A DNA stretch of 62,940 nucleotides, filler included, from Octopus bimaculoides (Eukaryota), in assembly GCF_001194135.2 (NCBI RefSeq). It is 4 parts of 4 records of this genome, joined end to end, with 100 filler letters (N's around TTAATTAATTAA, not from the genome) between each part and the next. Parts side by side here need not be neighbours in the genome. Positions count along the whole stretch, not along the records: positions 25,890 to 45,677 come from NC_068991.1; 3 more parts are not named here. One strand, 5' to 3'. Positions within the stretch are counted from its first letter, which is position 1, and every line of letters begins with the position of its first letter. Shown here piece after piece: positions 25,890-45,677 of this stretch. The notes under the pieces were generated by a model, which had not been told where the DNA came from, did not search any database, and saw only the letters and a list, made by a program, of their open reading frames with translations. A program made the position numbers and the translations under genes.

Positions 25890-25974
25890 ATATATATATA
25901 TATATATATATACATATGTATACATATATATATGTGTAGATGTATACAAATATATATGTGTGTGTGTGTGTGTG

Positions 25975-26051
25975 AAAATAAGCAACAGGATATCAAGAGG
26001 AGATGCAGTACAACTGTTTCAAGCGGCTCTTGATATCCTGTTGCTTATTTT
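25975..26051. other. 77-nt hairpin with a perfect 25-bp stem
   Basis: AAAATAAGCAACAGGATATCAAGAG (25975-25999) and its exact reverse complement (26027-26051), 27-nt loop. Confidence 0.9.
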
Positions 26052-26144
26052 GATGTTATTCACCTTACTTTGAGTTGTACAGATAATACTGCACTGATCT
26101 GATGCTTCAACTTATGTACCTAATTCAACTGAATCTCAATTATT

Positions 26145-26191
<47 letters not shown>

Positions 26192-26212
26192 CATATGCAT
26201 ATATATATGTAG

Positions 26213-26261
<49 letters not shown>

Positions 26262-26396
26262 CGCATGTAAAAATAAAAGTAAAAGAATAAAAGGATATAT
26301 ATATACATACATATGTATACATATATATATATGTAGATGTGTGTGTGTATATATATATATATATGCCTATACATATACATATATATATGCATATAC

Positions 26397-26427
<31 letters not shown>

Positions 26428-26499
26428 TACATATATATGTATACATATATATATATATGTAGATGTATATATGTATATATACACATGTGTGTATATCTG

Positions 26500-26767
26500 T
26501 GCATACATGTATGTGTGTGTGTGTGTGTGTGCACGTGTGTGTGTGTGTTAAATATATACACGCTAAATATATTACTTTTACTGAGGGTGCTGCTGTTCTC
26601 TGTGAATGCTGGAGTCAATGTCTTGTCAAGTAATGAAGCAAATCTGTACGTGTGTATATAGTATCTAGGTATACGTATTTATGTATATATGTATGCATAT
26701 AGATGATATGTATATATACATATACATATATAGATAGAGTGAGAGAGAGGGAGAAAAACAAATAGAG

Positions 26768-26864
<97 letters not shown>

Positions 26865-26992
26865 TATACACACATGCACACATATATATGTATGTATCTC
26901 TACACAAGCATAGCTGCGTATGTAGACAATCACATATACATTATACCTATAAGTAGATACATATTTATGCATATAAATGCATGTGTGTGTGT

Positions 26993-27059
<67 letters not shown>

Positions 27060-27509
27060 GATAGAAAGACAGAGATAGATATATATACATACATATATAT
27101 ATACATATATACGTACATATATACGTACATATATACATATAAATAATATACACACACACACATACACATATATATATATACATATAACATATAAATATAT
27201 ATCTGTGTATCTGTGTGCACATGTATGCATGTGCGTGTGCATACATGTACGTGTGTGTATGTGTGTATCTGTGTGCACATGTTTGCATGTATGTGTACGT
27301 GTGCATGCATGTGTTCTCTGTGTGTGTGTGTGTTAAATATATACATACGAAATTTATTTTTAAGGATTAACACTTTTATGATGAGGGTGCTGTTGTACTC
27401 TCTGAATGTGGAGTCAATGTCGCATCAAGTAATGAAGCAACTCTGTATGTGTGTATACAGTGTCTATGTATAAGTATTTATGTATATATGTATACATATA
27501 GATGATATG

Positions 27510-27561
<52 letters not shown>

Positions 27562-27660
27562 TAGACAGACAGATAGACAGATAGACAGACAGACTGATAG
27601 ATAGATAGATAGATAGATAGGGTGAGAGAGAGAGAAAGAGAGGGAGATACATACATATAT
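26500..27660. repeat. Local tandem duplication (~800-bp period) with a unique core inside microsatellite mosaic
   Basis: Core GTTAAATATATAC..GAGGGTGCTG..GGAGTCAATGTC..TCAAGTAATGAAGCAA..AGATGATATGTA at about 26545-26715 and 27330-27512. Confidence 0.85.
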
Positions 27661-27931
27661 ACATTTGTATATATACATACTCTATGTGTGCCTCTATATA
27701 TATGTATAGATATATGTAACAACATAATATATAAATTTACATACATGTTTGCATGTACATGATTTAGATATATGCTACATGTGTGTTTTTGTACATATAC
27801 ATACATGTGTGTTAAGTATATATTATTATTATTTGCAAACAACTTGCCGATACAAGTGCTACCAGTAAAAAGCTCTGTATACTGGACACTAGCAGATCTA
27901 TTACAGTTCACATTTTTTTTCAGCAGTTTTC

Positions 27932-29683
27932 TCAAATAAAATCATCTTCAGAATATGGATTAAATTCTTTAGTAAGGTCCAGGTCAACGAAATTGCTAGA
28001 AATCTGTGATTCTGTTTCATCTCTTAGTATATTTTTCACATTTTCTAAATCAAGACCATTCCAAGGTGGGGGCCACTTCACTACTATTGGCTTTTGATTG
28101 AGTTGGGAACTACTTTTAGGAAATATAATAAAAGAAGTTTCTTTTCCTTGGGAACTATCAGTAGATGGATGCCCATACGGATTGTTACATCTATTATAGT
28201 GAATTGATGTGTTAGGTGTCTGATGCATATTTTTTTCCAATCGTATAGAGGTAGAGGATGACAAAGCTGTTGCATTATCATTGTTTTTCTGAATAACAGA
28301 CCATCTTGCCTTTGGATTTACATTTGGAAATTGTGGGACTACAAGAGCTTGGTTGCAGTCATCAGTTGGTTTTTCTTTTGCAATGTTCTTTGGTTTCTCC
28401 ATTTTCTTATTCATTGGTGAAGTAATCTTGGAATGAAGTGATGTTTTCTTGCAGGGATATTTTTTGGTCTGTTGGAAATATGCAGTGTCATAAGATATTG
28501 GTGTTTTAAGAACACGAGCTATAGAATCTATAATTTGTGAAATACAACTGACATGTAACTTATATGAGTACAAGTGTGATTGTTTGTAGCCATTCTGTAA
28601 GGCATTTATAACATTTTGAACAGTTTTTTGAAAGATTTCAGATTTTTTATTTGTAGAAATAAACAGAGATTTTTTATTGTTCTTTGAATGCTTTAGTAAA
28701 GGAGAAGTAGATGTCATTTCTCGGCCAGACAAGCAACCGATGTCACTTAAATTTGGATTGTTCTTCAAAGAATTCGAAATTACAAAGCTTCGCCTTCTTA
28801 CAGAAAGATACTGATTTAGATTATCAGTTGATTCACAACATTTGGTTATAATTTCTTTCATGTTACAAGGAAGCTGAAAGTCTGGGTAACGTACAAAAAT
28901 AATTGGCAAATGGTAGTCAAGAGCTTGTTTCAGTTGTGAAAGACATTCGCTAGAAGAAATGGTTGATTCATTAAAAATGAATATGAAAGCATTACATTCT
29001 GTGATTATGTTATTTGATGATTGTAAAGTTGGAACCATACAATGGAGAAATGTAACAGCTGATACAGATCCTAATACAGCAGAACTCATAGTATCTTTGA
29101 CATTATTTGGATCCCGACATACAAACACTTTACTTGTATACAGAGTGTTTTCTTGAGGTAATCTCTTACTCTCCAGGTGAGATGCAGCAGCAATAGATGA
29201 GACAAAAACTGAAGGAATTTTTGAAATTTTTGTGCTTTTTTTCTTTTTTCTGAACTGGACTTTTTTTTTAAAAACATTATCAGATATTTTCACACCAGTT
29301 GGTTGTAAGGTCTCATTCTTAATAGCTTTTGTCTCTTGGTTAGTACTAATTAAAAAGCTATCTATACATGTGGCAGATTCTGGGGAAGTGGCTGGTGAAG
29401 AAATTTGCACATGAAGAGGTGAGACAGTATCTAGCTGAGCTAAACCTGAAACAGAATTTGGTAATAATGGGAGAATAAAATTCCAGAGGGTATCATAAGC
29501 TTTTTCTTGGATAATTCTTGGATAGAGTTTGAGTAAATCAATAAATATTTTTAAAAAGATTTGCTTTTCTTCAATCCAGCCTAAAGCCTGCCAGTATGTA
29601 AAGGTATTAACTACATCATCAGCAAAGTGTTCCTCTGCTCTTGTAAGCATGCAAGCTGGTAGCTGTCGATGGCAGTGTTCCAT
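27932..29683 (-). CDS. Uncharacterised 583-aa single-coding-exon protein with a probable divergent TIR-like domain and a basic NLS-like patch
   Basis: 1752-bp open frame with ATG (in-frame TAG just upstream) and TGA, non-repetitive. Residues 184-280 (KVFVCR..ECNAFIFIFNESTISSSECLSQLKQALDYHLPIIFVRYPDFQLP) follow the TIR beta/alpha alternation. ORF confidence is high; the domain call is about 0.55. Confidence 0.85.
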   Translation of the reverse strand: MEHCHRQLPACMLTRAEEHFADDVVNTFTYWQALGWIEEKQIFLKIFIDLLKLYPRIIQEKAYDTLWNFILPLLPNSVSGLAQLDTVSPLHVQISSPATSPESATCIDSFLISTNQETKAIKNETLQPTGVKISDNVFKKKVQFRKKKKSTKISKIPSVFVSSIAAASHLESKRLPQENTLYTSKVFVCRDPNNVKDTMSSAVLGSVSAVTFLHCMVPTLQSSNNIITECNAFIFIFNESTISSSECLSQLKQALDYHLPIIFVRYPDFQLPCNMKEIITKCCESTDNLNQYLSVRRRSFVISNSLKNNPNLSDIGCLSGREMTSTSPLLKHSKNNKKSLFISTNKKSEIFQKTVQNVINALQNGYKQSHLYSYKLHVSCISQIIDSIARVLKTPISYDTAYFQQTKKYPCKKTSLHSKITSPMNKKMEKPKNIAKEKPTDDCNQALVVPQFPNVNPKARWSVIQKNNDNATALSSSTSIRLEKNMHQTPNTSIHYNRCNNPYGHPSTDSSQGKETSFIIFPKSSSQLNQKPIVVKWPPPWNGLDLENVKNILRDETESQISSNFVDLDLTKEFNPYSEDDFI

Positions 29684-30469
29684 GGGTCTCTAATGTGTGG
29701 AGACCTGTGTGTGCATAGGACTGGTCGTAGCATGAGAAAGGCAATGGCTAAAAATAGTCTTTTGAACTAACTGACATCATTCATATTGATATATGTGGAC
29801 AATCTATTTCAATATCAACTTTCTCTTCTGACGTACAGTATAAATCTTCTTAATCCAATGATATACATTCAGCTACTAACATAATTATGGCATCATTATA
29901 AAAGCACAATGGATAATTCCAGGGCATTATCTCTGTATGTTATCTTTCAATAGAAGCAGCTTGTTGTCTAGACTACAGGTTTACTACCTCTAGTCCATTT
30001 TACTTGGTCTTCAACTGTTGCCATGGTTTCAGAAACCAACACTTTAGTAAGGTAATCAAATTATTTGCCATATTCAATCAAAGCATCCAGTGTATAAGAA
30101 AATGGGCAATTGTTGAAATTTTGTAGCTGAAGCCCTTTAAAGATATGAATTTTTATAAAAACACAATAAAGACACAAAAATAACTTTGATAGACAACAAG
30201 GTTATTATTATGAAAAAGAGTTAATCATTATAATTATTGTTACACATGATAGCTTAATGACTCAAGTCTACAATTTGTTTCAAATTCTGCTTATCATTGA
30301 TGTAGGTATATTAATAAATGTAAATATAAAGCTAATATTGGACATCACAAAACCCTGCAGTAAGACTGACAAGTGAAACAAGATCTAGTAATGACATTTA
30401 TGCTTTCAGCATCAGAAGTAATTGACTACTTAAAAGCATTATTAGTTTTATAACCTATTGAGGGGTGGT

Positions 30470-30770
30470 GGATTGGGAAAATTCCACTTTGATCAACTTT
30501 ATCTATTATTCTTCCCAGGTTGATAAAATTAAGTACCAGTGAACTACTTTGATTAATATAATCAACAGGAAAGCCTTATACTTCTATCTGGCATCAATAT
30601 ATAATTCATTGGGAGGCAGAAGAAATGACTGCTTACTTCCTTTCAGAGATTGTCTTTTATCCCACTGAGATCAATAAAGTAATTATCAATCATGTATTGA
30701 GGTCAATATAGTCACTTATACTCTATCAACTACAATATTTGATCTTGGTACCAGTATGCCCTCTCCTCTA
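30470..30770 (+). mobile_element. Two old SINE family A fragments
   Basis: GGTTGATAAAATTAAGTACCAG and GAGATCAATAAAGTAATT..GAGGTCAATAT remnants with CpG decay. Confidence 0.55.
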
Positions 30771-30839
30771 TAACAAAACACTTGTTTCTGCTTCTCTGTC
30801 TTTGTCACACTAATCTTTCATCCTCTAGCATGAGTTCCC

Positions 30840-31070
30840 CTCAAATGCCCCTGCCCCTCTCAAAATTCATTGTCTTGCAAGTTACTTGATGACTTTGCCA
30901 GTGCTGATGCCACATAAAAAGCATCCAGTCCACACTGTAAGGTGGTTGGCATTTGGAAGGGCATCCAGCTGTAAAAATCATGCCAGAACTGACCTCGCCT
31001 GTGCTGGTGCAGCATAAAAAGCACTCATTCCACTCTGCAGAGTGGTTGGTGTTAAGAAGGGCATCTCTTT
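30840..31070 (+). mobile_element. SINE family C / RTE 3'-UTR-related repeat
   Basis: GCCACATAAAAAGCA.CCAGTCCACACTG..GGTTGG..GGAAGGGCATCCAGCTGTA, shared with 41830-42400. Confidence 0.75.
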
Positions 31071-31073
31071 TCT

Positions 31074-31104
<31 letters not shown>

Positions 31105-31414
31105 CATCTGTGTGTGTGTGTGTGTGTGTGCATGCGTGTGCGTTCGTTTTTCATGCGAAAACGACTGTGAGAATTACTTCCTTACATGGGATGCATGAAT
31201 AATTTGACTTTGGATATATAATAGGCTCTTCAGTTTATTTTTTTATTAAAAATACTTAATATTGCTTTCTCTATATGATTCACTTCTTTAAAAAGGTTTT
31301 TCAATGTCAACTTCTGATATCAACAACGAAATTTTCCATTTTCCTCTATTTCAATGATTTCATTTCAAGTTTTAATTCACTATTTGCAAACAATTATGAT
31401 AAATTACTGAAATA

Positions 31415-31815
31415 GGCGTAGGAGTGGCTGTGTGGTAAGTAGCTTGCTTACCAACCACATGGTCCCGGGTTCAGTCCCACTGCGTGGCATCTTAGGCAAG
31501 TGTCTTCTACTATAGCCTCGGGCCGACCAAAGCCTTGTGAGTGGATTTGGTAGACGGAAACTGAAAGAAGCCTGTTGTATATATGTATATATATGCATGT
31601 GTGTATGTGTTTGTATGTCTGTGTTTGTCCCCCCAACATCGCTTGACAACCGATGCTGGTGTGTTTATGTCCCCGTAACTTAGCGGTTCGGCAAAAGAGA
31701 CCGATAGAATACGTACTAGGCTTCCAAAGAATAAGTCCTGGGGTCGATTTGCTCGACCAAAGGCGGTGCTCCAGCATGGCCACAGTCAAAAGACTGAAAC
31801 AAGTAAAAGAGTAAG
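31415..31815 (+). mobile_element. SINE family B, full length
   Basis: GGCGTAGGAGTGGCTGTGTGGTAAG (A box)..GGGTTCAGTCCC (B box)..internal microsatellite..GGCGGTGCTCCAGCATGGCC..AAGTAAAAGAGT tail. Confidence 0.92.
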
Positions 31816-32019
31816 TTCACAAATTTCGTTTGAATCTGCTCATTTTGTTAATTTCCATAAAAATCTTTTATTTATTTACTTTTTGTGCACCGTGTTCAGC
31901 TCTATGTAATTGTAGTCAGTCACACACACACACATGTGTGTTTTTGTATGTACGTTTGTATACATTTGTGTGTGTGTGTGTGTGAGAGAGAGAGAAAGAG
32001 AGGGAGAAGGAGTGTATTG

Positions 32020-33255
32020 TCATGTGGGATCCAGACAAAAGCCCCCTAGAACAATTGGCTGATAGGTGGAAACAAAAACCTCTGCATGGCAAATATGTGG
32101 CCTGTAGCAAACAAGCTGGTGTAGACCAAAAGTATACCCATTAGTGGCTAAGAAGCTCAGAGCTAAGGCAGAGAGCAAGGGCTTTATCTTAGCTGCTCAA
32201 GATCAGAGCTTATTGATCTGGAAAATCCATAAGCTGCTGACTTTCAATAAGACACACTACATAAAGGCAGATGCAGATCATCTTTACCTTCCTAGAGCCC
32301 AAGGAGATCGAGGCTTGATCCAATTTGAAATCTCTTACAAAATCACCCCAATTGGACTGGCCAAATATCTCGAAACATCTAACATTGATCTGGAACTACC
32401 AAACCAATGTGATAAAAAATGGAGTAGACCTAAAGTGCCAATACTGCAACAATGAAATTGAAACAGTAGACCACCTAATCTTTGGGTGTAAGATTTTAGC
32501 ACCAGTAGAATATAAATCTAAACATGACAAAATTGGCCAATTATCTACTCTGGATAATATGCTGGTATTATTAAATCAAAACTGCAGACAAATGAATATA
32601 AGCACCATCTTGAAGCTGTAACTGAGGGAGAAAATGTTACAACTCTTTAGGACTTTCCAGTACATACAGACTGGACCACCAAAGTTAATAAACCAGATAT
32701 TGTGAAAGACAAAAACAATAAAATCTGTTTATTGATTGACATGAGCATACCTTGTGATCATAATATCTCGGTAAAAGAATTTGATAAGCTCAGAAAATAT
32801 AAAGATTTGCTGATTGAAATAAAAAAATATGGCATCCCAAGACAGTATTGTAATATCAGTGATTGTAAGAGCACTTGGAATGATCAAAAAGGGAACTGAA
32901 AATTATTTGAGGATGATCCCTGGTTTACCATCCATACAGGAAGTGCAAAAAATTGTCTTAACTGGTACATCACACATATTGAAAAGAGCAATATCACTAT
33001 GAATTTTCTTTCTTTTATCCCCTTATTTTCTTTGTTTTCTTTTTTTCATTTTTTTCCTTCTTCCCTCTGTCTTTCTTCCCTTTTATTTTTCATTTCATAT
33101 GACTTTGTAAATGGACAATCTGGTGTGTTTATTTTAATGACCTGCCAATGTATACAGTGAGCTTCTTTGCCCTAGATGTTGGGAAGATACTTGGCAAGAA
33201 ATGGAAACAAAATTGAAAGAAGATAATGATAATAATAATAATAATAATAATAATA
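32020..33255 (+). mobile_element. R4/Dong-clade LINE 3' part (CCHC finger + restriction-like endonuclease), internally rearranged, (TAA)n tail
   Basis: Fragments KPLHGKY, GFILAAQDQSL, KCQYCNNEIETVDHLIFGC, KPDIV..LLIDMSIPCD..KLRKYKDL, QEVQKIVLTGTSHIL; AAT repeats at 33221-33256. Confidence 0.9.
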
Positions 33256-33256
33256 A

Positions 33257-33420
33257 TCACCACGTCACACACATATGATTGTGATGCATGCGCCTAGTGT
33301 ACATTTATCAGACGGGCAGTCATGGTGGGTATACTGGGCTTCATATATTTTACCCCAGTGTCACTTTAATGGCATGCACTGCTCTCTTACTCAACAACAA
33401 TAACAATAATAATAATGGCA
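33257..33420 (+). mobile_element. Unclassified short element with (AAC/AAT)n tail, stacked on the Dong tail
   Basis: GC-balanced 140-bp body followed by a triplet tail. Family not determined. Confidence 0.45.
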
Positions 33421-33640
33421 ATAATGGTTTCAAATTTTGGTATAAAGTTAGCAATTTCAGGGAAAGGTTTAAGTCAATTACAATGATCCCAATATGCAAC
33501 AGGTACTTATTTCATCAACCCCAAAAAGATGGAAAGCAAAATTGACCTTGGCAGAATTTAGACTGGGAATATAAAGATAGACAAAATACCACTAAGTATT
33601 TTATCTAGCATTCTAACGATTCTGTCAGCTCACCACCTTA
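33420..33640 (-). mobile_element. SINE family A, old CpG-decayed copy
   Basis: GGTACTTATTTCATCAACCCC..GGAAAGCAAAATTGACCTTGGCAGAATTT..AATACCACTAAGTATTTT. Confidence 0.7.
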
Positions 33641-36032
33641 ATAATAATAATAATAATAATGATGATGATGATGATGACAATGACGGTGATGGTGGTGGGG
33701 ACAGCAACGATGACAACGACATTAATGCTGATGACAACGATAACAACGACAACAACAACAACGATGATGATGATGGCAATGGTGATTTCTTTTATTAGCT
33801 ACAGAGGCATTGATGAGGAGGGTATCACAAGGACAATCTACACTTTGTGTTGGATTTAAATAAGAGAATAAAGGAAAGAAAGGGAAAAGACAATGAAATG
33901 AAGTAAAAGTTTATATATAGTACACAAAGTGCTAATGATGCAATCCCGATATAGGAAACACTTCAACTAGGGCCAATCAAAGAACCCCAAGAGATCCAGG
34001 AATACCCAACCACAAAAAGCACAAGCCCTTGCCTAACACTTATTCTCCAATCTACAGACACATGCTTAGAGTAGGTTCATTCATCCCACCATTTTTTGAT
34101 AGTCACCCACCTTTTCACAAGTTCACTGGGAGGTAGCACTTTCTTCCCCACCCTCACCTTCCTTTCCAAATCAATCCTTAAAAAGCCAATGAAATCTTGA
34201 CAGGAGAGGCAGGTTTCTTTATTCAATCCTTTCAGCTTATCCACCTCACAACTTCTTTTGCCATAGTTGCTAGACAGAAGAACACTGCCTGCCTTGCCCT
34301 TTTAAAGGGCGCGGCAGCGGTGTCATCGAAAGATGTAGACACCTCAAAATATGCTCTTTTAAGCCAATCTACAGAAACGGTCTCCGTACGACCATTCATA
34401 TCGATCGTAAAAACTTTAGGTGTGCAAGAAAGTACACGAAAAGGTCTTTTGTAAGGAGAAACAAGAGGTCCCTTAACAGAGTCATCCCGAACAAAAACAT
34501 GCGACCAAGAGTCAATATCTGATGGGACATTAGTGGGTGGAGACTGGTCCTGGGAACCTATGGGCGGAAGATTAGAAAAATAGGTGCAAAGTCTGGTGGC
34601 ATACAATGCCGAATCATGAAGCTGTGAAATGTCTGGCACCAACATCGTACCAGGCAATTCTAGTGTGGTACCATACAGCAGCTCTGTAGAGGAGAAACCC
34701 AGGTCTGCCTTGACAGCAGTATGACAGCCAAGAAGCACAATTGGCAGAAACTCAGTCCAAGACTGTAGATCTGGAGAGGCACATAGAACGGCCTTGAACT
34801 GTCTATGAAACCGTTTGACCATCCGGTAGGAAGCTGGATGGTAACTGGTCATACGAATGTGATGCACACCCAGGATTCGTGATAATTCACAAAATAAAGA
34901 AGCTTCAAACTGGCGTCTGCAATCAGTAGTTAATCTGGATGGAACTCTGAAGTGGAAAATCCAACTAGAAACAAAAGCTTGAGCAACAGATTCAGCAGAA
35001 ATGTCTGCTATTGGAATGGCTTCTGGCCAAACGGGAGAAATGATCGACACAGGTCAAGATATAAGAGAACCCGTGACTCAGAGGCCATGGTCCAACCAGA
35101 TCAATGTGGACATGATGAAAGCGGACCTCCAGAGGAGAAAACTGTCCAATTGGAGCATGAATGTGCCATTGGACCTTGGAATGCTGGCACTTGGGACAAG
35201 TGCGTGTTCAAGAAGTAATCATGTGACGCATATTTGGCCAGAAAAAACGAGCAGTGATAAGCTGCAGTGTAGCAGCAATGCCCGGATGTGACAAGGAGTG
35301 CAGGGCCTCAAACACTGAGCATTGGTGATTCTCAGGCATGAGTGGCCTGGGAGAACCAGTAGAGGTATCACAAAGAATAGTGCCTGCAGCTGATGGAAGC
35401 AGAAGATAGGCAAATTGGCAACAGGAGAACTTGGATGAAGTTAAATCTAACTTTGCCAAAGCTGGTTGGTCCTGCAAAATGGCAATCAAATCGATTGCAG
35501 CAGGAGATGAAAGAGAACAGACTGGAAGACGAGAAAGTGCGTCAGCAGGAACATTCTCTTTCCCAAGTATATGACGAATGTCACTAGTAAATTGTGAAAT
35601 AAAATCCAAGTGACAGAAAGCACGAGGCGAGAGTTTGTCCGTCTTAGATGATAGGGCAAACGTAAGAGGCTTGTGATCAGTATAGATCACAAAATCTCAA
35701 CCTTCAAGCTGATGCTGGAAATGACGAACTGACAGATAGATCGCTAAGAGCTCATGATCAAATGTGCTGTATCGCTGCTCAGCTGGTTGTAATTGGCAAG
35801 AAAAGAAAGCCAAAGGTTGAGTTCAGTCGTCTATTGTGTCCGTATTTATGTATATATAACAGAGAGAGAGATTTCCCTTAAGGCATACGCTACAGATAGC
35901 CCCCCACCAGTCATTTTGTGGAAGACAAAATAGACGATAAAGGATGACATATCTGTAGCAAAGAGGTGAAAGAGCGGTTGGTCATGAAGCTGGCACTGGG
36001 TCACCAATTTGTAAATGTCTGTGCGAATGTCG

Positions 36033-36064
36033 GGCTGCGTGTTCAAATCACATCAGGGTCACCA
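36033..36064 (-). promoter_or_regulatory. Primer binding site complementary to tRNA-Trp 3' end (32 nt)
   Basis: Minus strand TGGTGACCCTGATGTGATTTGAACACGCAGCC lies 2 nt from the LTR end. Compared with my recall of metazoan tRNA-Trp. Confidence 0.8.
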
Positions 36065-36066
36065 GT

Positions 36067-36513
36067 TGTAGGAAAAGTGATTAGCACTTGCTGGGTGCTT
36101 CACAATTCCATACATAATTCATGGAAGGAAAAGGAGAGGACAAGATCTCTCTGAATAAATAACAATAATTTATTTTCTCTGAATAAACATTCCATCTCTG
36201 GTTAGCGGTAGCCATGAACGCCTTCGTGAGGAAAGCAGCAGGGTTGAATGTTAGACACAAAAGCATTAAGGCATTATTACAGACTCAAAGTGTCGCTCGC
36301 CATTAAAGGTCCATTCACCATGGAGCAGCTCTAAGTTGCATCTCGCCTGGTCAGAGGCTGCAATCGGAAAGAGTGAATGGCGGTGAACCCTAGCTGTTGC
36401 TGATGATTGTGCATGCGCATAAGGGGCTTCCATCAGGTCTTCGGAGAGCTCTAATCCTTGCGCATGCGCAGATGAATGTTCCAACATGGCATCTAGAACC
36501 ATGCGTCACTACA
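36067..36513 (-). repeat. 5' LTR of the Gypsy element (447 bp, TGTAG...CTACA)
   Basis: Inverted 5-bp termini, adjacent PBS, minus-strand AATAAA, palindromic TGCGCATGCGCA at 36459-36470. Confidence 0.8.
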
Positions 36514-36564
36514 ATTCTAAATATATTACGTTAACCATATTTGTTTCCTAGAGTATTTAATATC

Positions 36565-36602
<38 letters not shown>

Positions 36603-36704
36603 GGATTATTATGAAGTAGCATTAGCATTAACTTTAATTCCTTTTTACATATATATATATATATATACAGCTTCATATAGATCTACACATGTTTCCTAGC
36701 TGAT

Positions 36705-36841
36705 GTTAGGAAGGGCACCCAGCTGTAGAAACCTTGCCAGAACAGATTGGAGTCTAGTGCAACCTCCTGGCTTGCCAGGCCTCAGTCAAACTGTCTAACC
36801 CATGCCAGCATGGAAAGCAGACGTTAAACGATGATGATGAT
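36705..36841 (+). mobile_element. SINE family C / RTE 3' tail with (GAT)n
   Basis: AGGAAGGGCACCCAGCTGTAGAAACC..CCATGCCAGCATGGAAAGCAGACGTTAAACGATGATGATG. Confidence 0.8.
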
Positions 36842-37066
36842 ATGTGTGTGTGTGTGTGTGTGTGCGTGTGTGCGTGTGTGTGTGTGTGCGTGTGTGTGTG
36901 TGCACATACACAGATATACATATACATACATATACACATACAAATATACATACATACATACATATATGCATACATAGATACATAGATACATACATGCATA
37001 CATACATACATACATACATACATACATACATGCATACATACCTACATACATACATACATACATACA

Positions 37067-37097
<31 letters not shown>

Positions 37098-37125
37098 GTA
37101 CATACATATATGTATGCATACATAC

Positions 37126-38975
37126 AGACCTAAATGACCCATAAATAAGGAAATGACCAGAGATTTAGAGATGTTCTAACTGAAGCATTTAATGGAGAGT
37201 TACAGACATGTAACATAGAGGATAACTGGAATTTCCTGCAAGATAACTTACTGAGATCCACAGACCAAATTTGTGGCTGGTACGAAGTCCCAGCCAGACC
37301 TAGGGTGACATGGTGGTAGAGCAGTGGAGTTGACAGGGCCATTAGAACAAAGAAACGGGCCTTGAAGGACTGGAAGGGTTGTAGTAGCAAGGAACTATAT
37401 CAGGTAGCTAGAAAGGAAGCTAGGAGGAAGGTATACTTGGCCAGGGGTGAAGCAGAATGGAAGAAGTTTTCCAGTGTTCTGTGGCATGAGAACCAGCAGC
37501 TTAAAGTGTTTCAGTTTGCAAGACAGTGTGTCAGGGAAAATTGTGGTGTTGTTGGAAAGAAGTGCATTCACATGGATGGTAGTTCACTTGCAGTTAGTGC
37601 CTGTAAAGAAATAGGCTTGAAAGTGCCACTACAAAAGGTTGCTAAATGTAGACAACTCATGGGAGAAGGAGAGTCTGCCTAATGTGGATCCAAAAGAGGG
37701 ACCAGCAATTCTAATAGACAGTAGCATGGTAGATAAAGCCATGAAGGATATGAAAACAGGGAAAGTCTTTGGCTCATCAGGAATCACCACGGTGATTCCT
37801 AAATCTGGTGATGTGGGTTATGATCTAGTCATTTGTATAGTTTATCAGGCTGTACACAAGAGTGTCATACCCAATGACTGGTGTAGCAGCACCATAGTCA
37901 ACTATTACAAAGGTAAAGGTGACGCCTTAGACAAATAATTATAGAGGCATCAAACTGTTGGATCAGGTGATGAAAGTCATGGAGCAGGTCATAGCCCAAC
38001 TAATTAGGAAGAGAGTTAGTCTAGAATGAGACGCAGTTTGGTTTTGTGTCAGGGAGAAGCACCACTGATGCTATATTGCTGGTAAGGCAGCTGCAGGGGA
38101 AGTACTTAACCAAAAAGAAACTTTTGTACCTGACTTCTGTTGACATGGAGAAAACCTTTGACAGAGTACCCCACTCCCTTATCTGGTGGTCAATATGGAA
38201 AATAGGGATAGATGAGTGGTTGGTGAGAGCTGTATAAGCCATGTACAAGGATGCTGTCAGTAAGGTGAGGGTTGACAACAAGTATAGCAATGAATTCAGT
38301 GTACAAATAGGAGTTCAAGGATTGGTCCCCTCTTGTTCATCATAATTCTCTAGGCAATAACAGAAGAATTTATGTTGGTCTGCTCTTGGGAACTTCTGCA
38401 TGCTGATGACCTTGTTCTTATAGCTGAAACACTGCCAAAACTATAGAAAAAAATTTCAGGTGTGGAAGCAAGTTCTGGATCAAAGGACCTTAGAGTTAAT
38501 TTTGCGGAGACCAAACTCTTGGTAAATAGGAAAGCAGACAAATCACAAATCCCCACTCTATATATAGGAAAGACATAGGTAGAGACTTCATAAGGTGTAC
38601 CCAGTGCAAGCTGTGGACACATAAGAGATGCAATAATATCAGAGGAAGGTTAATAGGGAAAATAGTCTTTGTGTGTGGTAGATGTACAGGTACAATAAAC
38701 ACTAGAAATGTACAGACTTCAAGGGGGATACTTAGAAGTAGTTGTTTGCCTTCATTATCTGGGTTACCAAGTCAGCAGTGGAGGTGGATGCACCAAGTGC
38801 ATAGCTACTAGAATAAGAATAGGCTGGGCAAAGTTCAGAGAGCTTTCTACCTCTGTTGGTAATAAAGAGTGAAAGGTAGATTGTATGATGCCTGTGTGTG
38901 AACAACCATGTTACATGGCAGTGAAACATGGGCTGTGACAGCAGATGACATGCAAAGGCTTGAAAGAAATTTAAT
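37126..38975 (+). mobile_element. RTE-clade LINE ORF2 remnant (RT), many stops and frameshifts
   Basis: IPNDWCSSTIVNYYKGKGDALD, GRSTTDAI..VRQLQ.KY, VDMEKTFDRVP, LHADDL. Confidence 0.9.
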
Positions 38976-39519
38976 AAATCCACTTTTAGATTATAATAGG
39001 TTTAATGTATCATTTTACTTTAGAAATCATCAATAATTCTAATAAAAGTTAATCTGAGTTGACATGGTAAGTAATTGCAATATAGAGTCCTCACAGTAAA
39101 GAGATTCCCTATTTACAGTGTTGGCACAATCAGATTACACATAGTTCACAGGTTTGATGCAGAAATAAACACATCATAGGTCTTGTATGTTGTAACTTAC
39201 AACCCAGCTAGATATTGCTACATAGCTCAAATACATATTCTATTTCTGAATAATCTTAGAGAACAATTAATATATTAAGAAAATGAGTATTCTAGATTGC
39301 CTTAGGGGATCAGTTAATGCAGTCCGTCAATTAATTAAGTAGATACACCAGTTGGCAATTAGAAATGTACTTAGAGGTACTTATAAGTCAGTTTCTTATA
39401 AAAGTCTACGATGTGAAACAAAGCGACCTCTTTAAAACTTGTTTTATACATACACACATGCATACATATATAAACACACACACATATGCACAGATATCTG
39501 CAAACAGTTATAATCTTAT

Positions 39520-40257
39520 ATTGTTGTACAGATAACAACTGTCACCTTACTGACAGCCTCCCTGTACATGGCTCGCACAGCTCTCACTAACCACTCATCT
39601 ATCACTAGTTTCTACGCTGACTACCAGATAAGAGATCAGGAGATGCTGTGTTGATGAAAGCCAGGTACGGAGGTTTATCTTCGGCTACAAATTTCTCCTG
39701 CAACTGTCTTACCAGAAATATAGCATCAGTGGTGCTTCTCCCAGGCACAAACCTAAACTCCATTTTGTCTAAGCTAACTATCTCCGTAATTAATTTGGGC
39801 TATGACCCTCTCTGTGACTTTCATCATCTGGTCCAACAATTTGATACCTCTGTAATTATTTGTATCACCTTTACCTTTGTAGCAGTTGACTATAGTGCTG
39901 CTACACTAGTTATCGTGTATGACTCCTGCATGTATCACCTGATTGACTATACAGGTGACTAGACTATACCCTAAACCCACCAGATATTTTAAGCATCTCT
40001 CCAATGATTCCTGATGGGCCAGGGGCTTTCCTTGTCTTCATACCTTTAATTGCTTTATCTACTAAGGTATTGACATTTCGAATAGCTGGTCCCTCTGTTG
40101 GATGGACATTAGGCAGACTCTCTTTCTCCCATTCATTCTCTTCATTTCGCAAACTTTCATAGTGGCATCTTCAAGTTTCTCTCTTTGCAGTATCATTAAA
40201 TACAAGTGTGCCATCATCCATGTGGACACATTTCTCTCCTATGATATCACAATTCTC

Positions 40258-40262
<5 letters not shown>
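39520..40262 (-). mobile_element. RTE-clade LINE ORF2 fragment, inverted
   Basis: WEKESLPNVHPTEGPAI..MKTRKAPGPSGI; the reverse complement includes the QFRFVPGRSTTDAI region. Confidence 0.88.
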
Positions 40263-40299
<37 letters not shown>

Positions 40300-40326
40300 A
40301 CCTCTGCGTGTATATATATGTATATA

Positions 40327-42400
40327 TATAAACCTCTGTACCTGGCTTTCATTGACATGGAGAAAGCCTTTGACAGGGTCCCCCTGATCTCTTATCTGGT
40401 GTTCAATGAGGAAACTAGGGATAGAAGAATGGTTACTGAGAGCTGTACGAGCCATGTACAGGGAGGCTGTCAGTAAGGTGAGGGCTGGCAACGAGTACAG
40501 TGAAGAATTCCGGGTAGAGGTAGGTGTCCACCAAGGTTCAGTCCTCAGCCCCCTCCTATTTATCATAGTCCTCTAGGTAATAACAGAGGAAGTCAAGACA
40601 GAATGCCCCTGGGCGCTACTCTATGCTGATAACCTTACTTTAATTGCTGAGTCACTATCAGAACTAGGGAAGGTTTAGGTGTGGAAGCAAGGATTAGAAT
40701 CGAAGGGCCTTAGAGTCAACCTAGCTAAAACCGAAGTCCTAATAAGTAGGAAGGCAGACAAACCACAAATCCCTTCAGATAGATGGCCCTGCTCAATCTG
40801 TAGAAAAGGCGTAGGTAGAAACTCTATAAGATGTACCCAGTGTAAGCTATGGACACATAAGAGGTGCAGCAATATCAAAGGAAGGCTAACTGAGAAGATA
40901 GTTTTTGTATGTGGTGTGGTGTGTGCGTACGAGTAGATGTAATCGCCTTACCTCGGTTTTCTTTTCCTCAACTGCGAGTCCGTCTTGCGGTATCCGATCC
41001 TTGAAGCTTGCCCCGACCCAAAGTACACCAGGAANNNNNNNNNNTTAACACGTCTTGTCCTGACCGCAGCCCCGTTCGAAAAGGGCACGAATGCCGATCG
41101 AGGCTCCCTCTGCCCTTTTTCCCCTTCCGGTCAGCCTCCCCAGACACTGACGTCATACCACATGTGGCAGATGCTCAGGAGCAATAAACACTGAAAATGT
41201 GCAGAGAACAACTTCTGCCACATTCCAGGGAGAAGAACTAGAAGTAGTTGATAGCTTCTGTTACCTAGGTGACCAAGTCAGTAGCAGGGGTGGGTGCTCT
41301 GAAAGTGTAGCTGCTAGAATAAGAATAACCTGGGCAAAGTTCAGAGAACTCCTACCTCTGCTGGTGACAAAGGGCCTCTCACTCAGAGTAAACGGTAGAC
41401 TGCATGATGCATGTGTACGAACAGCCATGCTTCATGTCAGTGAAACATTGGCCGTGACTGCTGAGGATATGCGTAATCTTGCAAGGAACGAAGCCAGTAT
41501 GCTCCGCTGGATGTGTAATGTCAGTGTGCATACTCGACGGAGTGTAAGTACCTTGAAAGAAAAGTTGGACCTAAGAAGCATCAGGTGTGGTGTGCAAGAG
41601 AGACGACTACGCTGGTATGGTCATGTGGTGAGAATGGATGAGGATAGCTGTGTGAAAAAGTGTCACACCCTAGCAGTTGAGGGAACCTGTGGAAGAGGTA
41701 GACCCAGGAAGACTTGGGATGAGTTGGTGAAGCATGACCTTTGAACATTAGGCCTCACTGAAGTAATGACTTCTGACCAAGACCTTTGGAAATATGCTGT
41801 GCTTGAGAAGACCCGGCAAGCCAAGTGAGTCCATAACCCATGGCCTATGCCAGTGGTGTAACCAGCCCACTTATATGCACCTTTCCTGTATTGGATACTA
41901 AACTTTGCTTGCGAAGACCTGTTGAGGCGAGTGAAATCGAAATCAAATTCAATGACAGCACCGCATGACTGGCATCTATGCTAGTAGAGCGCTAAGAGCA
42001 CCATCCAAGTATGATCATTGCCAGGACCACAGACTGGCTCCCATGCTAGTGGCACATAAAAAGCACCATTCATGCGTGATCGTTACCAGCATCGCCTTAG
42101 TGGCACATGAAAAGCATTCGAGTGAGGTCATTGCCAGCGCCGCTGACTGGCTCCTGTGCAGGTGGCATGTAAAAAACACCATTTGAGCATGGCCATTGCC
42201 AGTACCGCCTGACTGGCCCACATGCCGGTGGCATGTAAAAGCACCCACTACACTCACGGAGTGGTTTGTATTAGGAAGGGCATCCAGCTGTAGAAACTCT
42301 GCCAGATCAGATTGGAGCCTGGTGCAGCCATCTGGCTCGCCAGTCCTCAGTCAAACCATGCCAGCATGGAAAGCGGATGTTAAACGATGATGATGATGAT
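40327..42400 (+). mobile_element. RTE-clade LINE 3' half with complete 3' UTR and (GAT)n tail, interrupted by an LTR-like insert
   Basis: DMEKAFDRV, CSICRKGVGRNSIRCTQCKLWTHKRC, LRWYGHVVRM..RGRPRKTW (41199-41744). The 3' UTR has 4-5 GTGGCACATAAAAAGCACC-type repeats. Confidence 0.92.
40915..41162. mobile_element. Young solo-LTR-like insertion (or collapsed full LTR element) with 5-bp TSD
   Basis: Termini TGTGGTGTG...CATACCACA (8/9 inverted match). TGTGG duplicated at 40910-40914 and 41163-41167. CpG-rich, with a 10-N gap inside. RTE sequence resumes in register. Confidence 0.75.
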
Positions 42401-43088
42401 ATATATAATGGAAAAATTATACAAAATGTATAAATAAATGATGAGTAAAGCACTGACACAGTTTCTATTACCTGTTGTTATCCGTACATTTATTGCAGGA
42501 ACTTTGCAGTGGCGATTGGGGTAACAGTATTAATAAAATCGATGGAATGAGAAAAAGATTTTATTGGGTATCACACATGTTTCGACCCGTTCAGGTTCTC
42601 TTTGGGTACATCAATAAATAGTCTCACTAGAGATTTTCTGAGTCGGCTTACATACCACTATATGTCCATCAAATTCGAAAATGAATAAAAAACAGAGAAT
42701 AATTATTGAAAGGCAAAAATTTCAAATATGAACGTGAAAATTATAAATTTGCTGTTGTAACTGTTAAGAGAAAAAAAAGGATGTAGAAGTTGAAAGGAAG
42801 ATAATACTTAGACGAAAATTTTGGTTGTGTCGGTGCTTGACAGAACCTTGATGACTGCTATGAAGCAGGAAAGTATACTAGCCCCTATATATATTTAATA
42901 CTGAATATTTCATATATTCAATAAGACATTCAATACTTCATTTCATTTTACTATTTATATTATATATTCCATATTCTATATCCCACATTAATTTTATAAG
43001 AATATAAATAAAATATAAAAAACAGACAGAGTTGGAACTCTTTTAAATAATATATTCCTCTATACACTATCATACAAACCCCTTTTTA

Positions 43089-43134
<46 letters not shown>

Positions 43135-45164: not shown

Positions 45165-45365
45165 TTTTATTTGTTTAAGTCATCTGACTGTGGCCATGCT
45201 GAGCATCACCTTCAGTCAAAGAAATCATCCCCAGGACTTATTCTTTTGTAAGCCTAGTACTTATTCTATCGGTCTCTTTTGCCAAACTGCTAAGTTACAG
45301 GGACATAAACAAACCAACATTAGTTGTCAAGCGATGGTGGGGGAGCAAACTCAGAAACATACACA
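45165..45365 (-). mobile_element. SINE family B, 3' half
   Basis: GACTGTGGCCATGCTGAGCA..CCCCAGGACTTATTCTTTTGTAAGCCTAGTACTTATTCTATCGGTCTCTTTTGCC. Confidence 0.8.
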
Positions 45366-45427
45366 CAAATATATATACACACACACACACACAGACACAG
45401 ACACACACACACACACACACACACGAC

Positions 45428-45677
45428 GCTTTAGATACAAATAATTACAGAGGCATCAAGCTGTTAGATCAGGTTATGAAAGTTACAGAGAGGGTCATAG
45501 CCCAATTAATTAGGGAGCGAATCAATTTAGATGAGATGCAGTTTGGGTTCGTGCCAGGTAAAAGCACTACTGATGCCTTATTTCTAGTGAGACAGTTGCA
45601 GGAGAAATACCTAGCTAAGGATAAACCTCTGTACCTGGCTTTCGTTGACATGGAGAAAGCCTTTGACAGGGTCCCCC
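45428..45677 (+). mobile_element. RTE-clade LINE RT fragment cut by scaffold join
   Basis: DEMQFGFVPGKSTTDALFLVRQLQEKYLAKDKPLYLAFVDMEKAFDRVP. Confidence 0.9.

What the first reader, a model, noticed from the sequence alone, without database searches (positions are those of the whole stretch)
27932..29683. Intronless 583-aa gene with a split, probably catalytically dead TIR-like domain
Seen: the only long intact ORF in the window. It has a helical N-terminal block (aa ~18-73), a KKKVQFRKKKK basic patch (139-149) and a beta/alpha core (184-280). An ~70-aa low-complexity insert is followed by a helix-ending segment (352-393), then a disordered tail with PIVVKWPPP and an acidic end. Established: SARM1/TIR_2-type domains have FILVLS..S.WC..E(L/I)..AL....IIPV...F..P, with the Glu needed for NAD+ cleavage. 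Here the match is FIFIFNESTISSSECLSQLKQALDYHLPIIFVRYPDFQLP with Gln250 (codon 28934-28936) at that position. There is no TM, LRR, ARM or SAM domain that I can recognise. Inference: a novel nuclear or cytosolic pseudo-NADase TIR adaptor, possibly mollusc-restricted.
Basis: partly seen in the sequence, partly recalled or inferred. Interest (0 to 1): 0.75.

Follow-up and report, generated by a model that had tools for sequence, protein, structure and literature searches.

The report
Unrecognized split, glutamate-less TIR protein family
This octopus gene is real, under purifying selection, and encodes a member of an undescribed animal protein family (ctenophore, bryozoan, molluscs) built around a highly diverged TIR-type immune-signalling domain that lacks the residue needed to cleave NAD+, so it most likely acts as an assembly scaffold rather than an enzyme.

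Summary
The 583-aa ORF (27932..29683, minus strand) exists as described and is the only long ORF in the piece. Its coding region is a single exon and is conserved in Octopus sinensis (96%), another octopod (85%) and Argonauta (55%). dN/dS is 0.24-0.33 overall and 0.08-0.24 in the core.

No Pfam, NCBIfam, PADLOC or PDB sequence search recognises it. An exhaustive profile search found 38 relatives with the same architecture. AlphaFold2 on that 39-sequence alignment gives a confident core (pLDDT 83-97). Foldseek matches it almost only to TIR domains (E down to 1.4e-4). hhalign against a TIR_2 mini-profile gives 94.6% probability and places Gln250 opposite the catalytic Glu. That column holds Glu in only 1 of 39 members.

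"Mollusc-restricted" is refuted: Mnemiopsis (ctenophore) and Watersipora (bryozoan) are solid members. "Nuclear" and "adaptor" remain inference.

Beyond the TIR, the family shares an N-terminal helical domain, an IPxISVT motif, a C-terminal KETxYxVFP...PxxVxWP hairpin and an acidic FxDΦDL[ST] tail.

Best reading: a non-enzymatic, oligomerising TIR scaffold with docking motifs. It is a new variant of a known kind, of moderate interest.

The parts
27932..29683 (-). Complete single-exon coding sequence, 583 aa plus stop
   Evidence: ORF; orthologs 96/85/55%; dN/dS 0.24-0.33
29657..29668 (-). N-terminal R-x-L-P motif (aa 6-9, RQLP); family consensus R-[KR]-L-P
   Evidence: R6 27/39, L8 25/39, P9 28/39
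29465..29638 (-). N-terminal helical domain (aa 16-73) with the family signature A..W...H....L..LL..YPnLIQ...D..W.F..P
   Evidence: helices, pLDDT about 90; A33 33/39, W36 32/39, Y54 34/39, P55 37/39, W67 32/39
29237..29269 (-). Basic patch KKKVQFRKKKK (aa 139-149) in a disordered linker; octopod-specific, possible NLS
   Evidence: gapped in non-octopod members; pLDDT <50
29198..29218 (-). IPSVFVS (aa 156-162): octopus version of the conserved short motif [ILV]-P-x-I-S-V-T upstream of the TIR
   Evidence: P157 35/39, I159 23/39, V161 20/39
28787..29134 (-). TIR-like domain, N-terminal part (aa 184-299): betaA VFVC, alphaA, betaB, alphaB, betaC FIFIF, alphaC C..QL..AL, betaD LPIIFVR, alphaD
   Evidence: pLDDT 83-97; Foldseek TIR hits; hhalign 94.6% to TIR_2; dN/dS 0.10-0.22
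28934..28936 (-). Codon 250, CAA = Gln, at the position of the TIR catalytic Glu
   Evidence: family column Q12 L7 D6 S5 ..., E only 1/39
28652..28786 (-). Disordered low-complexity insert (aa 300-344) between alphaD and the alphaD'/betaE/alphaE unit
   Evidence: pLDDT <50; length-variable in all members; 56% S/T/N/K/P/Q
28505..28651 (-). TIR-like domain, C-terminal part (aa 345-393): long helix, betaE (L..GY..A..Y), alphaE
   Evidence: pLDDT 92-97; about 220-column alignments bridging the insert, TMt up to 0.61; dN/dS 0.08-0.24
28151..28504 (-). Disordered, fast-evolving tail (aa 394-511)
   Evidence: pLDDT <50; dN/dS 0.36-0.47
28067..28147 (-). Conserved C-terminal hairpin motif (aa 513-539): [KR]-E-T-x-Y-[LIV]-[VL]-F-P ... 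P-x-[VIL]-V-[KR]-W-P
   Evidence: T516 37/39, P538 38/39, P532 32/39, V535 30/39; strands 516-520, 533-537, pLDDT about 70-80
27956..28012 (-). Acidic C-terminal linear motif (aa 558-576): S-[DE]-S-[SP]-phi-x-F-x-D-[VIL]-D-L-[ST]
   Evidence: F565 31/39, D567 29/39, D569 30/39, L570 27/39, S/T571 22/39

Best explanation
The ORF is a functional, single-coding-exon octopus gene. It belongs to a previously undescribed, pre-bilaterian animal protein family. Each member has five elements: (i) a small N-terminal helical domain, (ii) a short IPxISVT motif, (iii) a strongly diverged TIR-fold domain whose alphaD/DE region carries a disordered insert, (iv) a disordered tail, and (v) a conserved C-terminal beta-hairpin motif plus an acidic FxD-phi-DL[ST] peptide. 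The TIR domain keeps the structural alphaC/betaD signature (C...L..A....IP..FVR) but lacks the catalytic Glu and the preceding Trp of NAD+-cleaving TIRs. This holds across the family, not only in octopus. Shown: gene reality and selective constraint, family membership and breadth, TIR fold, absence of the Glu. Inferred: like the non-enzymatic animal TIR proteins, it works as a soluble intracellular scaffold. The TIR domain would self-associate or pair with other TIRs, and the N-terminal domain and C-terminal linear motifs would recruit partners.
For: Gene reality: ORF; orthologs in three other octopods; dN/dS 0.24-0.33 overall and 0.08-0.24 in the TIR halves, against 0.4-0.7 in linkers; locus collinear with O. 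sinensis over 4.8 kb. Family: 38 hits at E<=1e-3 in 1.84e9 representatives. Named members are all 'uncharacterized' and come from Lymnaea, Littorina, Patella, Lottia, Bulinus, Aplysia, Crassostrea, Haliotis, Nucella, Watersipora and Mnemiopsis. A leave-out HMM gives 4.5e-46 and 1.3e-26 for the bryozoan and the ctenophore. TIR fold: the AF2 core has pLDDT 83-97 and betaA-alphaA...betaE-alphaE order. About 42 of the top 50 Foldseek PDB hits are TIR domains, including plant NLR TIRs, TLR15, MyD88, SPARTA, ThsB, SARM1 and AbTir, with best E=1.4e-4 and TMt up to 0.61. hhalign to TIR_2 gives 94.6%, E=7.2e-8, over 99 columns. The family profile hits a cyanobacterial triple-TIR_2 protein at E=2.3e-7. 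No Glu: Q250 aligns to the Glu of YCRKEIDLA and of the ..ELD.. motifs in solved TIR NADases, and the column is Glu in 1/39. Soluble: no TM or signal peptide. Transcript-like contigs of the presumed decapodiform ortholog come from two runs with identical ends at an AATAAA signal. Established knowledge: the Glu is required for TIR NADase chemistry, and most animal TIRs are inactive scaffolds (preprint 10.64898/2026.09.21.753143).
Against: Pfam TIR and TIR_2 models do not reach threshold on any member (best E=0.095, in 2 of 39). No PDB sequence hit was found even with the family profile. The fold evidence rests on a predicted model, and I could not inspect its coordinates. Foldseek E-values are modest. 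The P0057 hit is significant only as the sum of three weak domains. The BB-loop region used by canonical TLR adaptors is length-variable and not conserved here, so a classical TLR/MyD88-type heterotypic interaction is not implied. There is no expression, localisation, oligomerisation or partner data for octopus. One member (P0010) does carry Glu at the site.
Confidence: 0.6

Rival explanations
1. The domain is still an enzyme. It would cleave NAD+ or another nucleotide or N-glycosidic substrate using different residues, for example the partly conserved acidic residue at 239 or the conserved Cys189/Cys247 pair lining the former pocket.
For: C189 (30/39) and C247 (28/39) lie at the C-terminal end of betaA and the N-terminus of alphaC, where TIR active sites sit. 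Position 239 is D/E in 23/39. TeTIR shows that cryptic, insert-bearing animal TIR-like domains can be strong NADases.
Against: No invariant acidic residue exists in the pocket-forming loops. The canonical Glu column is Q/L/D/S/K and the preceding Trp position is variable. All characterised TIR, TeTIR and DNPH-type enzymes need the Glu. Cys247 is simply the common TIR 'WC..E' cysteine.
Confidence: 0.1
2. The core is a flavodoxin-like fold that only resembles TIR (convergence or a very remote relationship). It would have an unrelated role, such as nucleotide or ligand binding or a purely structural one. The conserved N- and C-terminal elements would be the real functional parts.
For: Pfam, NCBIfam, PADLOC and PDB sequence searches are negative. 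A few non-TIR Rossmann-like hits (ThiM kinase, EF-G domains) appear among Foldseek matches at E about 7e-3. The most invariant residues outside the core are in the C-terminal motifs.
Against: The top-ranked structural matches are almost exclusively TIRs from plants, animals and bacteria. An independent profile-profile alignment gives 94.6% and reproduces the TIR alphaC/betaD motif in register: C247-C, L251-I, A254-A, P260-P. Two members give weak TIR_2 Pfam hits.
Confidence: 0.15
3. The ORF is a non-functional or transposon-derived sequence, or an unexpressed retrocopy that happens to be open.
For: Single-exon CDS. The surroundings are rich in microsatellites and retroelement debris. There is no direct expression evidence in octopus, and the 85% ortholog's Logan contig is collinear with genomic DNA.
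Against: dN/dS is well below 1 and lowest in the folded parts. The ORF is intact in four octopod genomes and in about 35 distant taxa with the same architecture. No transposon-family match. The single-exon CDS is a family-wide feature on large genomic contigs. The presumed decapodiform ortholog has transcript-like contigs.
Confidence: 0.03

Closest known systems
TIR_2 / TIR domain superfamily (Pfam PF13676, PF01582)
   Same: Same predicted fold and strand/helix order. The alphaC-betaD signature is in register (C...[LI]..A....[IV]P). hhalign gives 94.6% to a TIR_2 mini-profile, and Foldseek top hits are TIRs.
   Different: Below every Pfam threshold. betaA is V[YF]xC instead of D[VI]F[IL]S[YH]. 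No catalytic Glu and no Trp before it. The BB loop is variable. A 45-aa (length-variable) disordered insert lies after alphaD. The domain is always flanked by family-specific N- and C-terminal elements.
   Same: TIR fold. Q250-L-K-Q-A-L matches the E642-I-V-T-A-L register (SARM1 motif recalled from memory; the register itself was tested against other TIR NADases). SARM1 TIR is among the Foldseek hits at E=1.5e-2.
   Different: No ARM or SAM domains. Gln instead of the catalytic Glu. SARM1 is not the best structural match; plant and TLR/MyD88-type TIRs score better.
Non-enzymatic animal TIR adaptors and cryptic TIR scaffolds (MyD88, TIRAP, TRIF/TRAM; BCAP/PIK3AP1)
   Same: Soluble proteins that pair a catalytically silent TIR with other interaction modules and linear motifs. 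The MyD88 TIR is a Foldseek hit. BCAP is a precedent, from my own knowledge, for a TIR domain invisible to sequence profiles.
   Different: No death domain, DBB, ankyrin or RHIM. No TRAF6-type PxExx motif. The BB-loop 'box 2' is not conserved. Relatives were found in a ctenophore, a bryozoan and molluscs; no vertebrate was among the named members.
TeTIR domains (TEP1, NWD1/2, NPHP3; bioRxiv 10.64898/2026.09.21.753143)
   Same: A recently recognised animal TIR-like family that standard models miss and that is enlarged by insertions. NPHP3 is a Glu-less, presumably inactive member.
   Different: TeTIR is invariably directly upstream of a NACHT ATPase with WD40/TPR repeats, has an RWG loop and usually keeps the Glu. 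The octopus family has no NACHT, no RWG and no Glu.

Membership tests
TIR superfamily (fold level) | Flavodoxin-like alpha/beta fold with parallel sheet and betaA-alphaA-betaB-alphaB-betaC-alphaC-betaD-alphaD-betaE-alphaE order | tested here: met
   The AF2 model (39-seq MSA) has this order with pLDDT 83-97. About 42 of the top 50 Foldseek PDB hits are TIR domains, E down to 1.4e-4, TMt up to 0.61. This rests on a predicted, not solved, structure.
TIR superfamily (sequence level) | Profile-profile similarity to TIR/TIR_2 alignments | tested here: met
   hhalign of A3 against three TIR_2 domains: 94.6%, E=7.2e-8, 99 columns. The family HMM hits the TIR_2 protein P0057 at E=2.3e-7, but only as the sum of three weak domains.
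Pfam TIR (PF01582) / TIR_2 (PF13676) | Score above the Pfam gathering threshold | tested here: not met
   No hit for the window protein at E<=10. Only 2 of 39 family members give TIR_2 at best E=0.095.
TIR NADases (SARM1, plant TNL TIRs, bacterial TIR NADases) | Catalytic Glu on alphaC | tested here: not met
   Gln250 (CAA) aligns to the Glu. The family column holds Glu in 1/39.
TIR NADases | Aromatic Trp four residues before the Glu (W...E) | tested here: not met
   Position 246 is E/D/F/S/... with no Trp.
TIR NADases | NAD+ hydrolase or cyclase activity | not testable with these tools
   Needs a biochemical assay.
SARM1 orthologs | ARM plus tandem SAM domains N-terminal to the TIR | tested here: not met
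   No ARM or SAM in Pfam scans of the window protein or of any family member.
TLR-pathway TIR adaptors (MyD88/TIRAP/TRIF/TRAM type) | Conserved BB-loop (box 2) and a partner module such as a death domain | tested here: not met
   The betaB-alphaB loop is variable in length and sequence. No death-fold or other Pfam domain. Interaction with TLR or MyD88 TIRs is not testable here.
TeTIR (TEP1-type extended TIR) | Directly upstream of a NACHT ATPase; RWG loop; usually a catalytic Glu | tested here: not met
   No NACHT, no RWG, no Glu. Definition taken from the preprint.
   No such Pfam hit. One ortholog per species in the searches, and a collinear locus in O. sinensis. The true TE remnants lie elsewhere in the piece.

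The most novel reading that the evidence does not exclude
An ancient (ctenophore-to-mollusc) family of Glu-less, split-TIR scaffolds that acts as a so-far-missing non-TLR TIR hub in invertebrate innate immunity or selective autophagy. TIR oligomerisation would present the invariant C-terminal hairpin. It would also present a Ser-rich acidic F-x-D-[VIL]-D-L-[ST] peptide. That peptide fits an LIR-type (aromatic-x-x-aliphatic with upstream acidic/Ser residues) or pLxIS-like phospho-docking motif that recruits Atg8-family or IRF-type effectors. The family would have been lost or diverged beyond recognition in vertebrates and ecdysozoans.
Probability: 0.12. Interest if true: 0.75.

Novelty: new variant of a known kind. 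Interest (0 to 1): 0.5.

Why it matters
TIR domains are the common currency of innate immune signalling in animals, plants and bacteria. Catalogues of animal TIR proteins rely on Pfam/SMART hits, so they would miss this family entirely. It adds a conserved, single-copy, soluble TIR-fold protein with a unique architecture to the repertoire of lophotrochozoans and at least one ctenophore. It is a clean natural example of a TIR lineage that lost NADase chemistry early yet stayed under strong constraint. Its sharply defined linear motifs could be used to fish for partners. Like the 2026 TeTIR report, it suggests that more cryptic TIR-like families remain to be found by structure-guided searches. 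No functional data exist, so its role in immunity is a hypothesis.

Tried and rejected
- AF2 on the 4-sequence octopod alignment gave mean pLDDT 29.5 and was discarded.
- Pfam, NCBIfam, PADLOC and PDB sequence searches of the single protein and of the octopod profile gave only noise: Scabin-like E=2.2, a MED15 fragment E=0.23, LpxB E=0.17, and a PADLOC DRT model at 12.9 bits over the low-complexity linker. All were rejected as chance.
- The family profile against PDB sequences gave nothing.
- The last indexed protein search used a concatenated conserved-block alignment and returned no hits, not even the Octopus orthologs. I treat this as a failure of candidate selection on artificial sequences, not as evidence.
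- The viral Foldseek library failed with a tool error.
- The Logan contig of the 85% ortholog is collinear with genomic DNA, so it says nothing about splicing or expression.
- TeTIR membership was considered and rejected.
- A TRAF6-type PxExx motif was looked for and not found.
- ARAGORN found no tRNA-like element in the piece.
- Literature searches for cephalopod TIR proteins, ecTIR-DC families, ctenophore TIRs and cryptic TIR domains found no description of this family.
- I could not obtain model coordinates. Whether the C-terminal hairpin or the N-terminal helices dock on the TIR core, and the geometry of the Cys189/Cys247 pocket, remain unknown.
Full report
**1. The observation**

The piece (25890-45677) contains one long ORF, 27932..29683 on the minus strand, with an ATG start and 583 codons. 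Every other ORF of 80 aa or more is either a microsatellite artefact or a retroelement remnant of at most 272 aa. At the local base composition (stop-codon frequency 0.071) an open frame of this length is expected about 1e-14 times in the piece. Codon 250 is CAA (Gln) at 28934-28936.

**2. It is a real, constrained gene**

The word-indexed protein search found three relatives:
- Octopus sinensis LOC118765432 (96%)
- an unnamed octopod from a Logan assembly (85%)
- Argonauta hians Ahia01_000260000 (55%)

All are full length and have no Pfam domain. In the alignment the 184-300 and 350-400 blocks are almost invariant.

Nei-Gojobori dN/dS is 0.24 (vs O. sinensis), 0.31 (vs the 85% ortholog) and 0.29 (vs Argonauta). 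The values are 0.10-0.22 and 0.08-0.24 in the two halves of the folded core, against 0.4-0.7 in linkers.

The locus is collinear with O. sinensis over about 4.8 kb. The coding region is one uninterrupted ORF in this window, O. sinensis, Argonauta and an unnamed 6.1-Mb contig carrying a distant member. 'Intronless' is therefore established only for the CDS. A pyrimidine-rich tract ending in AG lies 25 nt before the ATG and may be a 5'UTR splice acceptor.

I found no direct expression evidence for octopus. For the next-closest relative (P0004, E=2.6e-100, presumably a decapodiform cephalopod), contigs from two independent runs share the same 5' end. Both stop at the same base on an AATAAA signal, as expected of an mRNA of about 3.4 kb.

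**3. Standard annotation tools see nothing**

Pfam, NCBIfam, PADLOC and PDB sequence searches gave only noise. This held for the single protein, the octopod profile and each family member scanned separately. Two of 39 family members give TIR_2 at E of about 0.1. This explains why every database entry is 'uncharacterized'.

**4. A wider family**

An exhaustive HMMER search with the octopod profile against 1.84 billion representatives gave 38 proteins at E<=1e-3, 14 of them at E<=1e-10. They are 440-720 aa long and match in several separate stretches.

Named members:
- Gastropods: Lymnaea, Littorina, Patella (two species), Lottia, Bulinus, Aplysia, Haliotis, Nucella
- A bivalve: Crassostrea virginica
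- A bryozoan: Watersipora subatra
- A ctenophore: Mnemiopsis leidyi

I built an HMM without the last two and scored them at a search space of 1.84e9 sequences. The results were 4.5e-46 (bryozoan) and 1.3e-26 (ctenophore), with alignments that cover the N-terminal block and both core halves. The family is therefore not mollusc-restricted and probably predates Bilateria. Many further members come from unnamed ENA and Logan assemblies whose taxa I could not determine.

**5. Shared architecture**

- An N-terminal R-[KR]-L-P motif.
- A helical block, A..W...H....L..LL..YPnLIQ...D..W.F..P (P55 37/39, Y54 34/39).
- [ILV]-P-x-I-S-V-T (P157 35/39).
- A beta/alpha core, V[YF]xC ... FVR ... DxFxFxxxxxTLxDxxCxxxLxxAxxxxIPxxFVRxPxFxLPxxLP (L251 39/39, A254 37/39, P260 35/39, R/K265 39/39).
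- A length-variable low-complexity insert.
- L..GY..A..Y plus a helix.
- A disordered tail.
- [KR]-E-T-x-Y-[LIV]-[VL]-F-P ... P-x-[VIL]-V-[KR]-W-P (T516 37/39, P538 38/39).
- An acidic S-[DE]-S-[SP]-phi-x-F-x-D-[VIL]-D-L-[ST] end.

The octopus basic patch (139-149) is octopod-specific, so it is weak ground for a family-wide nuclear role. Hydropathy shows no signal peptide or membrane span. The maximum, 1.62, lies inside the folded core.

**6. Fold**

AlphaFold2 on four sequences failed, with pLDDT 29.5. On the 39-sequence alignment it gave confident structure for 30-73 (helices, about 90), 181-300 (83-97), 345-395 (92-97) and two C-terminal strands (about 70-80). Elsewhere it predicted disorder.

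The core runs E185-189, H198-208, E212-215, H223-228, E232-237, H239-256, E261-265, H275-299, [300-344 disordered], H345-368, E370-371, H374-392. That is the betaA-alphaA ... betaE-alphaE order of a TIR domain, with an insertion after alphaD.

Foldseek against the PDB returned TIR domains in about 42 of the top 50 places. They include RPPT, RPS4/RRS1, Roq1, RPP1, SNC1, RPV1, RUN1, chicken TLR15, SPARTA, MyD88 filaments, Bacillus TIRs, Hydra TRR-2, ThsB, SARM1 and AbTir. The best E is 1.4e-4 at probability 1.00. Alignments of about 220 columns bridge the insert, with target-normalised TM up to 0.61.

**7. Sequence-level link and the catalytic residue**

The family profile hit a Nostocaceae protein with three TIR_2 domains plus CHASE2 at E=2.3e-7. 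That significance is the sum of three weak per-domain matches.

hhalign of the family against that single protein aligned 221-275 to its third TIR_2 domain. Against an alignment of its three TIR_2 domains, hhalign gave 94.6% probability, E=7.2e-8, over 99 columns from betaA (VFVC vs AFISY) to beyond betaD. In that alignment C247, L251, A254 and the betaD proline are in register with the TIR_2 motif C..E[IL]..A....IP, and Gln250 faces the Glu.

PDB alignments of the cyanobacterial protein tie the same column to the Glu of the ..ELD.. motif in solved bacterial TIR NADases.

Across the family the column reads Q12, L7, D6, S5 and others, with a single Glu. The position four residues upstream, a Trp in NADase TIRs, is also variable. 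No acidic residue in the pocket-forming loops is invariant. Loss of canonical NADase chemistry is thus an ancestral family trait.

Because the codon is CAA, A-to-I editing can yield only Arg or Gln, never Glu.

**8. Mechanism**

Shown:
- a constrained, soluble protein
- a TIR fold
- no catalytic Glu
- conserved flanking modules

Inferred from what is established for TIR domains: they either cleave NAD+ through the Glu or act as homo- and heterotypic assembly platforms, and most animal TIRs are inactive (preprint 10.64898/2026.09.21.753143). On that basis the protein most likely works as an oligomerising scaffold. Its N-terminal helical domain and C-terminal motifs would recruit partners.

It is probably not a classical TLR adaptor. 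The BB loop is unconserved, and there is no death domain or TRAF6 motif. I put about 0.6 on this overall reading: about 0.85 on 'TIR-fold, Glu-less family' and about 0.5 on 'scaffold/adaptor'.

Rivals:
- a non-canonical enzyme using other residues, such as the conserved Cys189/Cys247 (0.1)
- a merely TIR-like fold with another role (0.15)
- a non-functional ORF (0.03)

**9. Comparison with known families**

At fold and profile-profile level this is a TIR-superfamily member, but it fails Pfam thresholds.
- It is not a SARM1 ortholog: no ARM or SAM, and no Glu.
- It is not a MyD88/TIRAP/TRIF-type adaptor.
- It is not a TeTIR: no adjacent NACHT, no RWG loop, no Glu.

TeTIR and BCAP are precedents for cryptic animal TIR domains. 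I found no paper describing this family.

**10. Verdict**

The taxonomic guess was wrong, and the functional labels remain hypotheses. It is a new variant of a known kind: an undescribed, old animal family with a split, Glu-less TIR and distinctive terminal motifs. Interest is moderate (0.5). It is worth a targeted biochemical and expression follow-up, but no data yet tie it to immunity.

Noticed in passing
window 25890-27900, 36750-37140, 43150-43830: Dense TA/CA-type microsatellites that generate many spurious 80-200 aa '[10 protein letters not shown]' ORFs on both strands. GC falls to 0.23-0.28 here.
   Followed up: no
window 32325-32621 (+); 34232-35690 (-); 40679-41744 (+); 45476-45677 (+): Retroelement debris: a zf-RVT fragment; an Integrase_H2C2 plus integrase-core-like pair of broken ORFs (LTR-element pol remnant); a PHD/C1-like zinc-finger ORF followed by an RT-tail-like ORF; and an RT start cut by the piece edge.
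   Followed up: partly
window 31410-31814 and 45136-45411: A 230-400 bp interspersed repeat present twice in the piece in opposite orientation. It has at least five copies in the 21.7-kb O. sinensis locus L004. ARAGORN finds no tRNA-like head. Probably a SINE-like element.
   Followed up: partly
window about 29709-29745 (minus strand), 25 nt upstream of the ATG: A pyrimidine-rich tract ending ...cacacag, which could be the 3' splice site of a 5'UTR intron. 'Intronless' is shown only for the CDS.
   Followed up: no
window codons 189 (29117-29119), 247 (28943-28945), 380 (28544-28546): Three cysteines conserved across the family: C189 30/39, C247 28/39, C380 24/39. The first two sit at the end of betaA and the start of alphaC, flanking the former active-site pocket. 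They could matter for redox or ligand chemistry. This is untested.
   Followed up: no
P0057 (Nostocaceae protein, residues 434-565): This cyanobacterial protein has three tandem TIR_2 domains plus CHASE2. The first two keep the catalytic Glu, but the third has Gln at that position, like the octopus protein.
   Followed up: partly
L005 and L006 (Logan ERR12370320, ERR12408771): Contigs for the P0004 ortholog from two runs share both ends and stop on AATAAA. This implies an mRNA of about 3.4 kb with a long (927 nt) 5'UTR and a 470-nt 3'UTR.
   Followed up: partly
P0010 (ENA ERZ25767047, locus L002 6001-7884): The only family member with Glu at the catalytic column (NIKELMEAW). Its taxon is unknown and its CDS is a single ORF on a 6.1-Mb contig. 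It is a natural comparator for activity assays.
   Followed up: no
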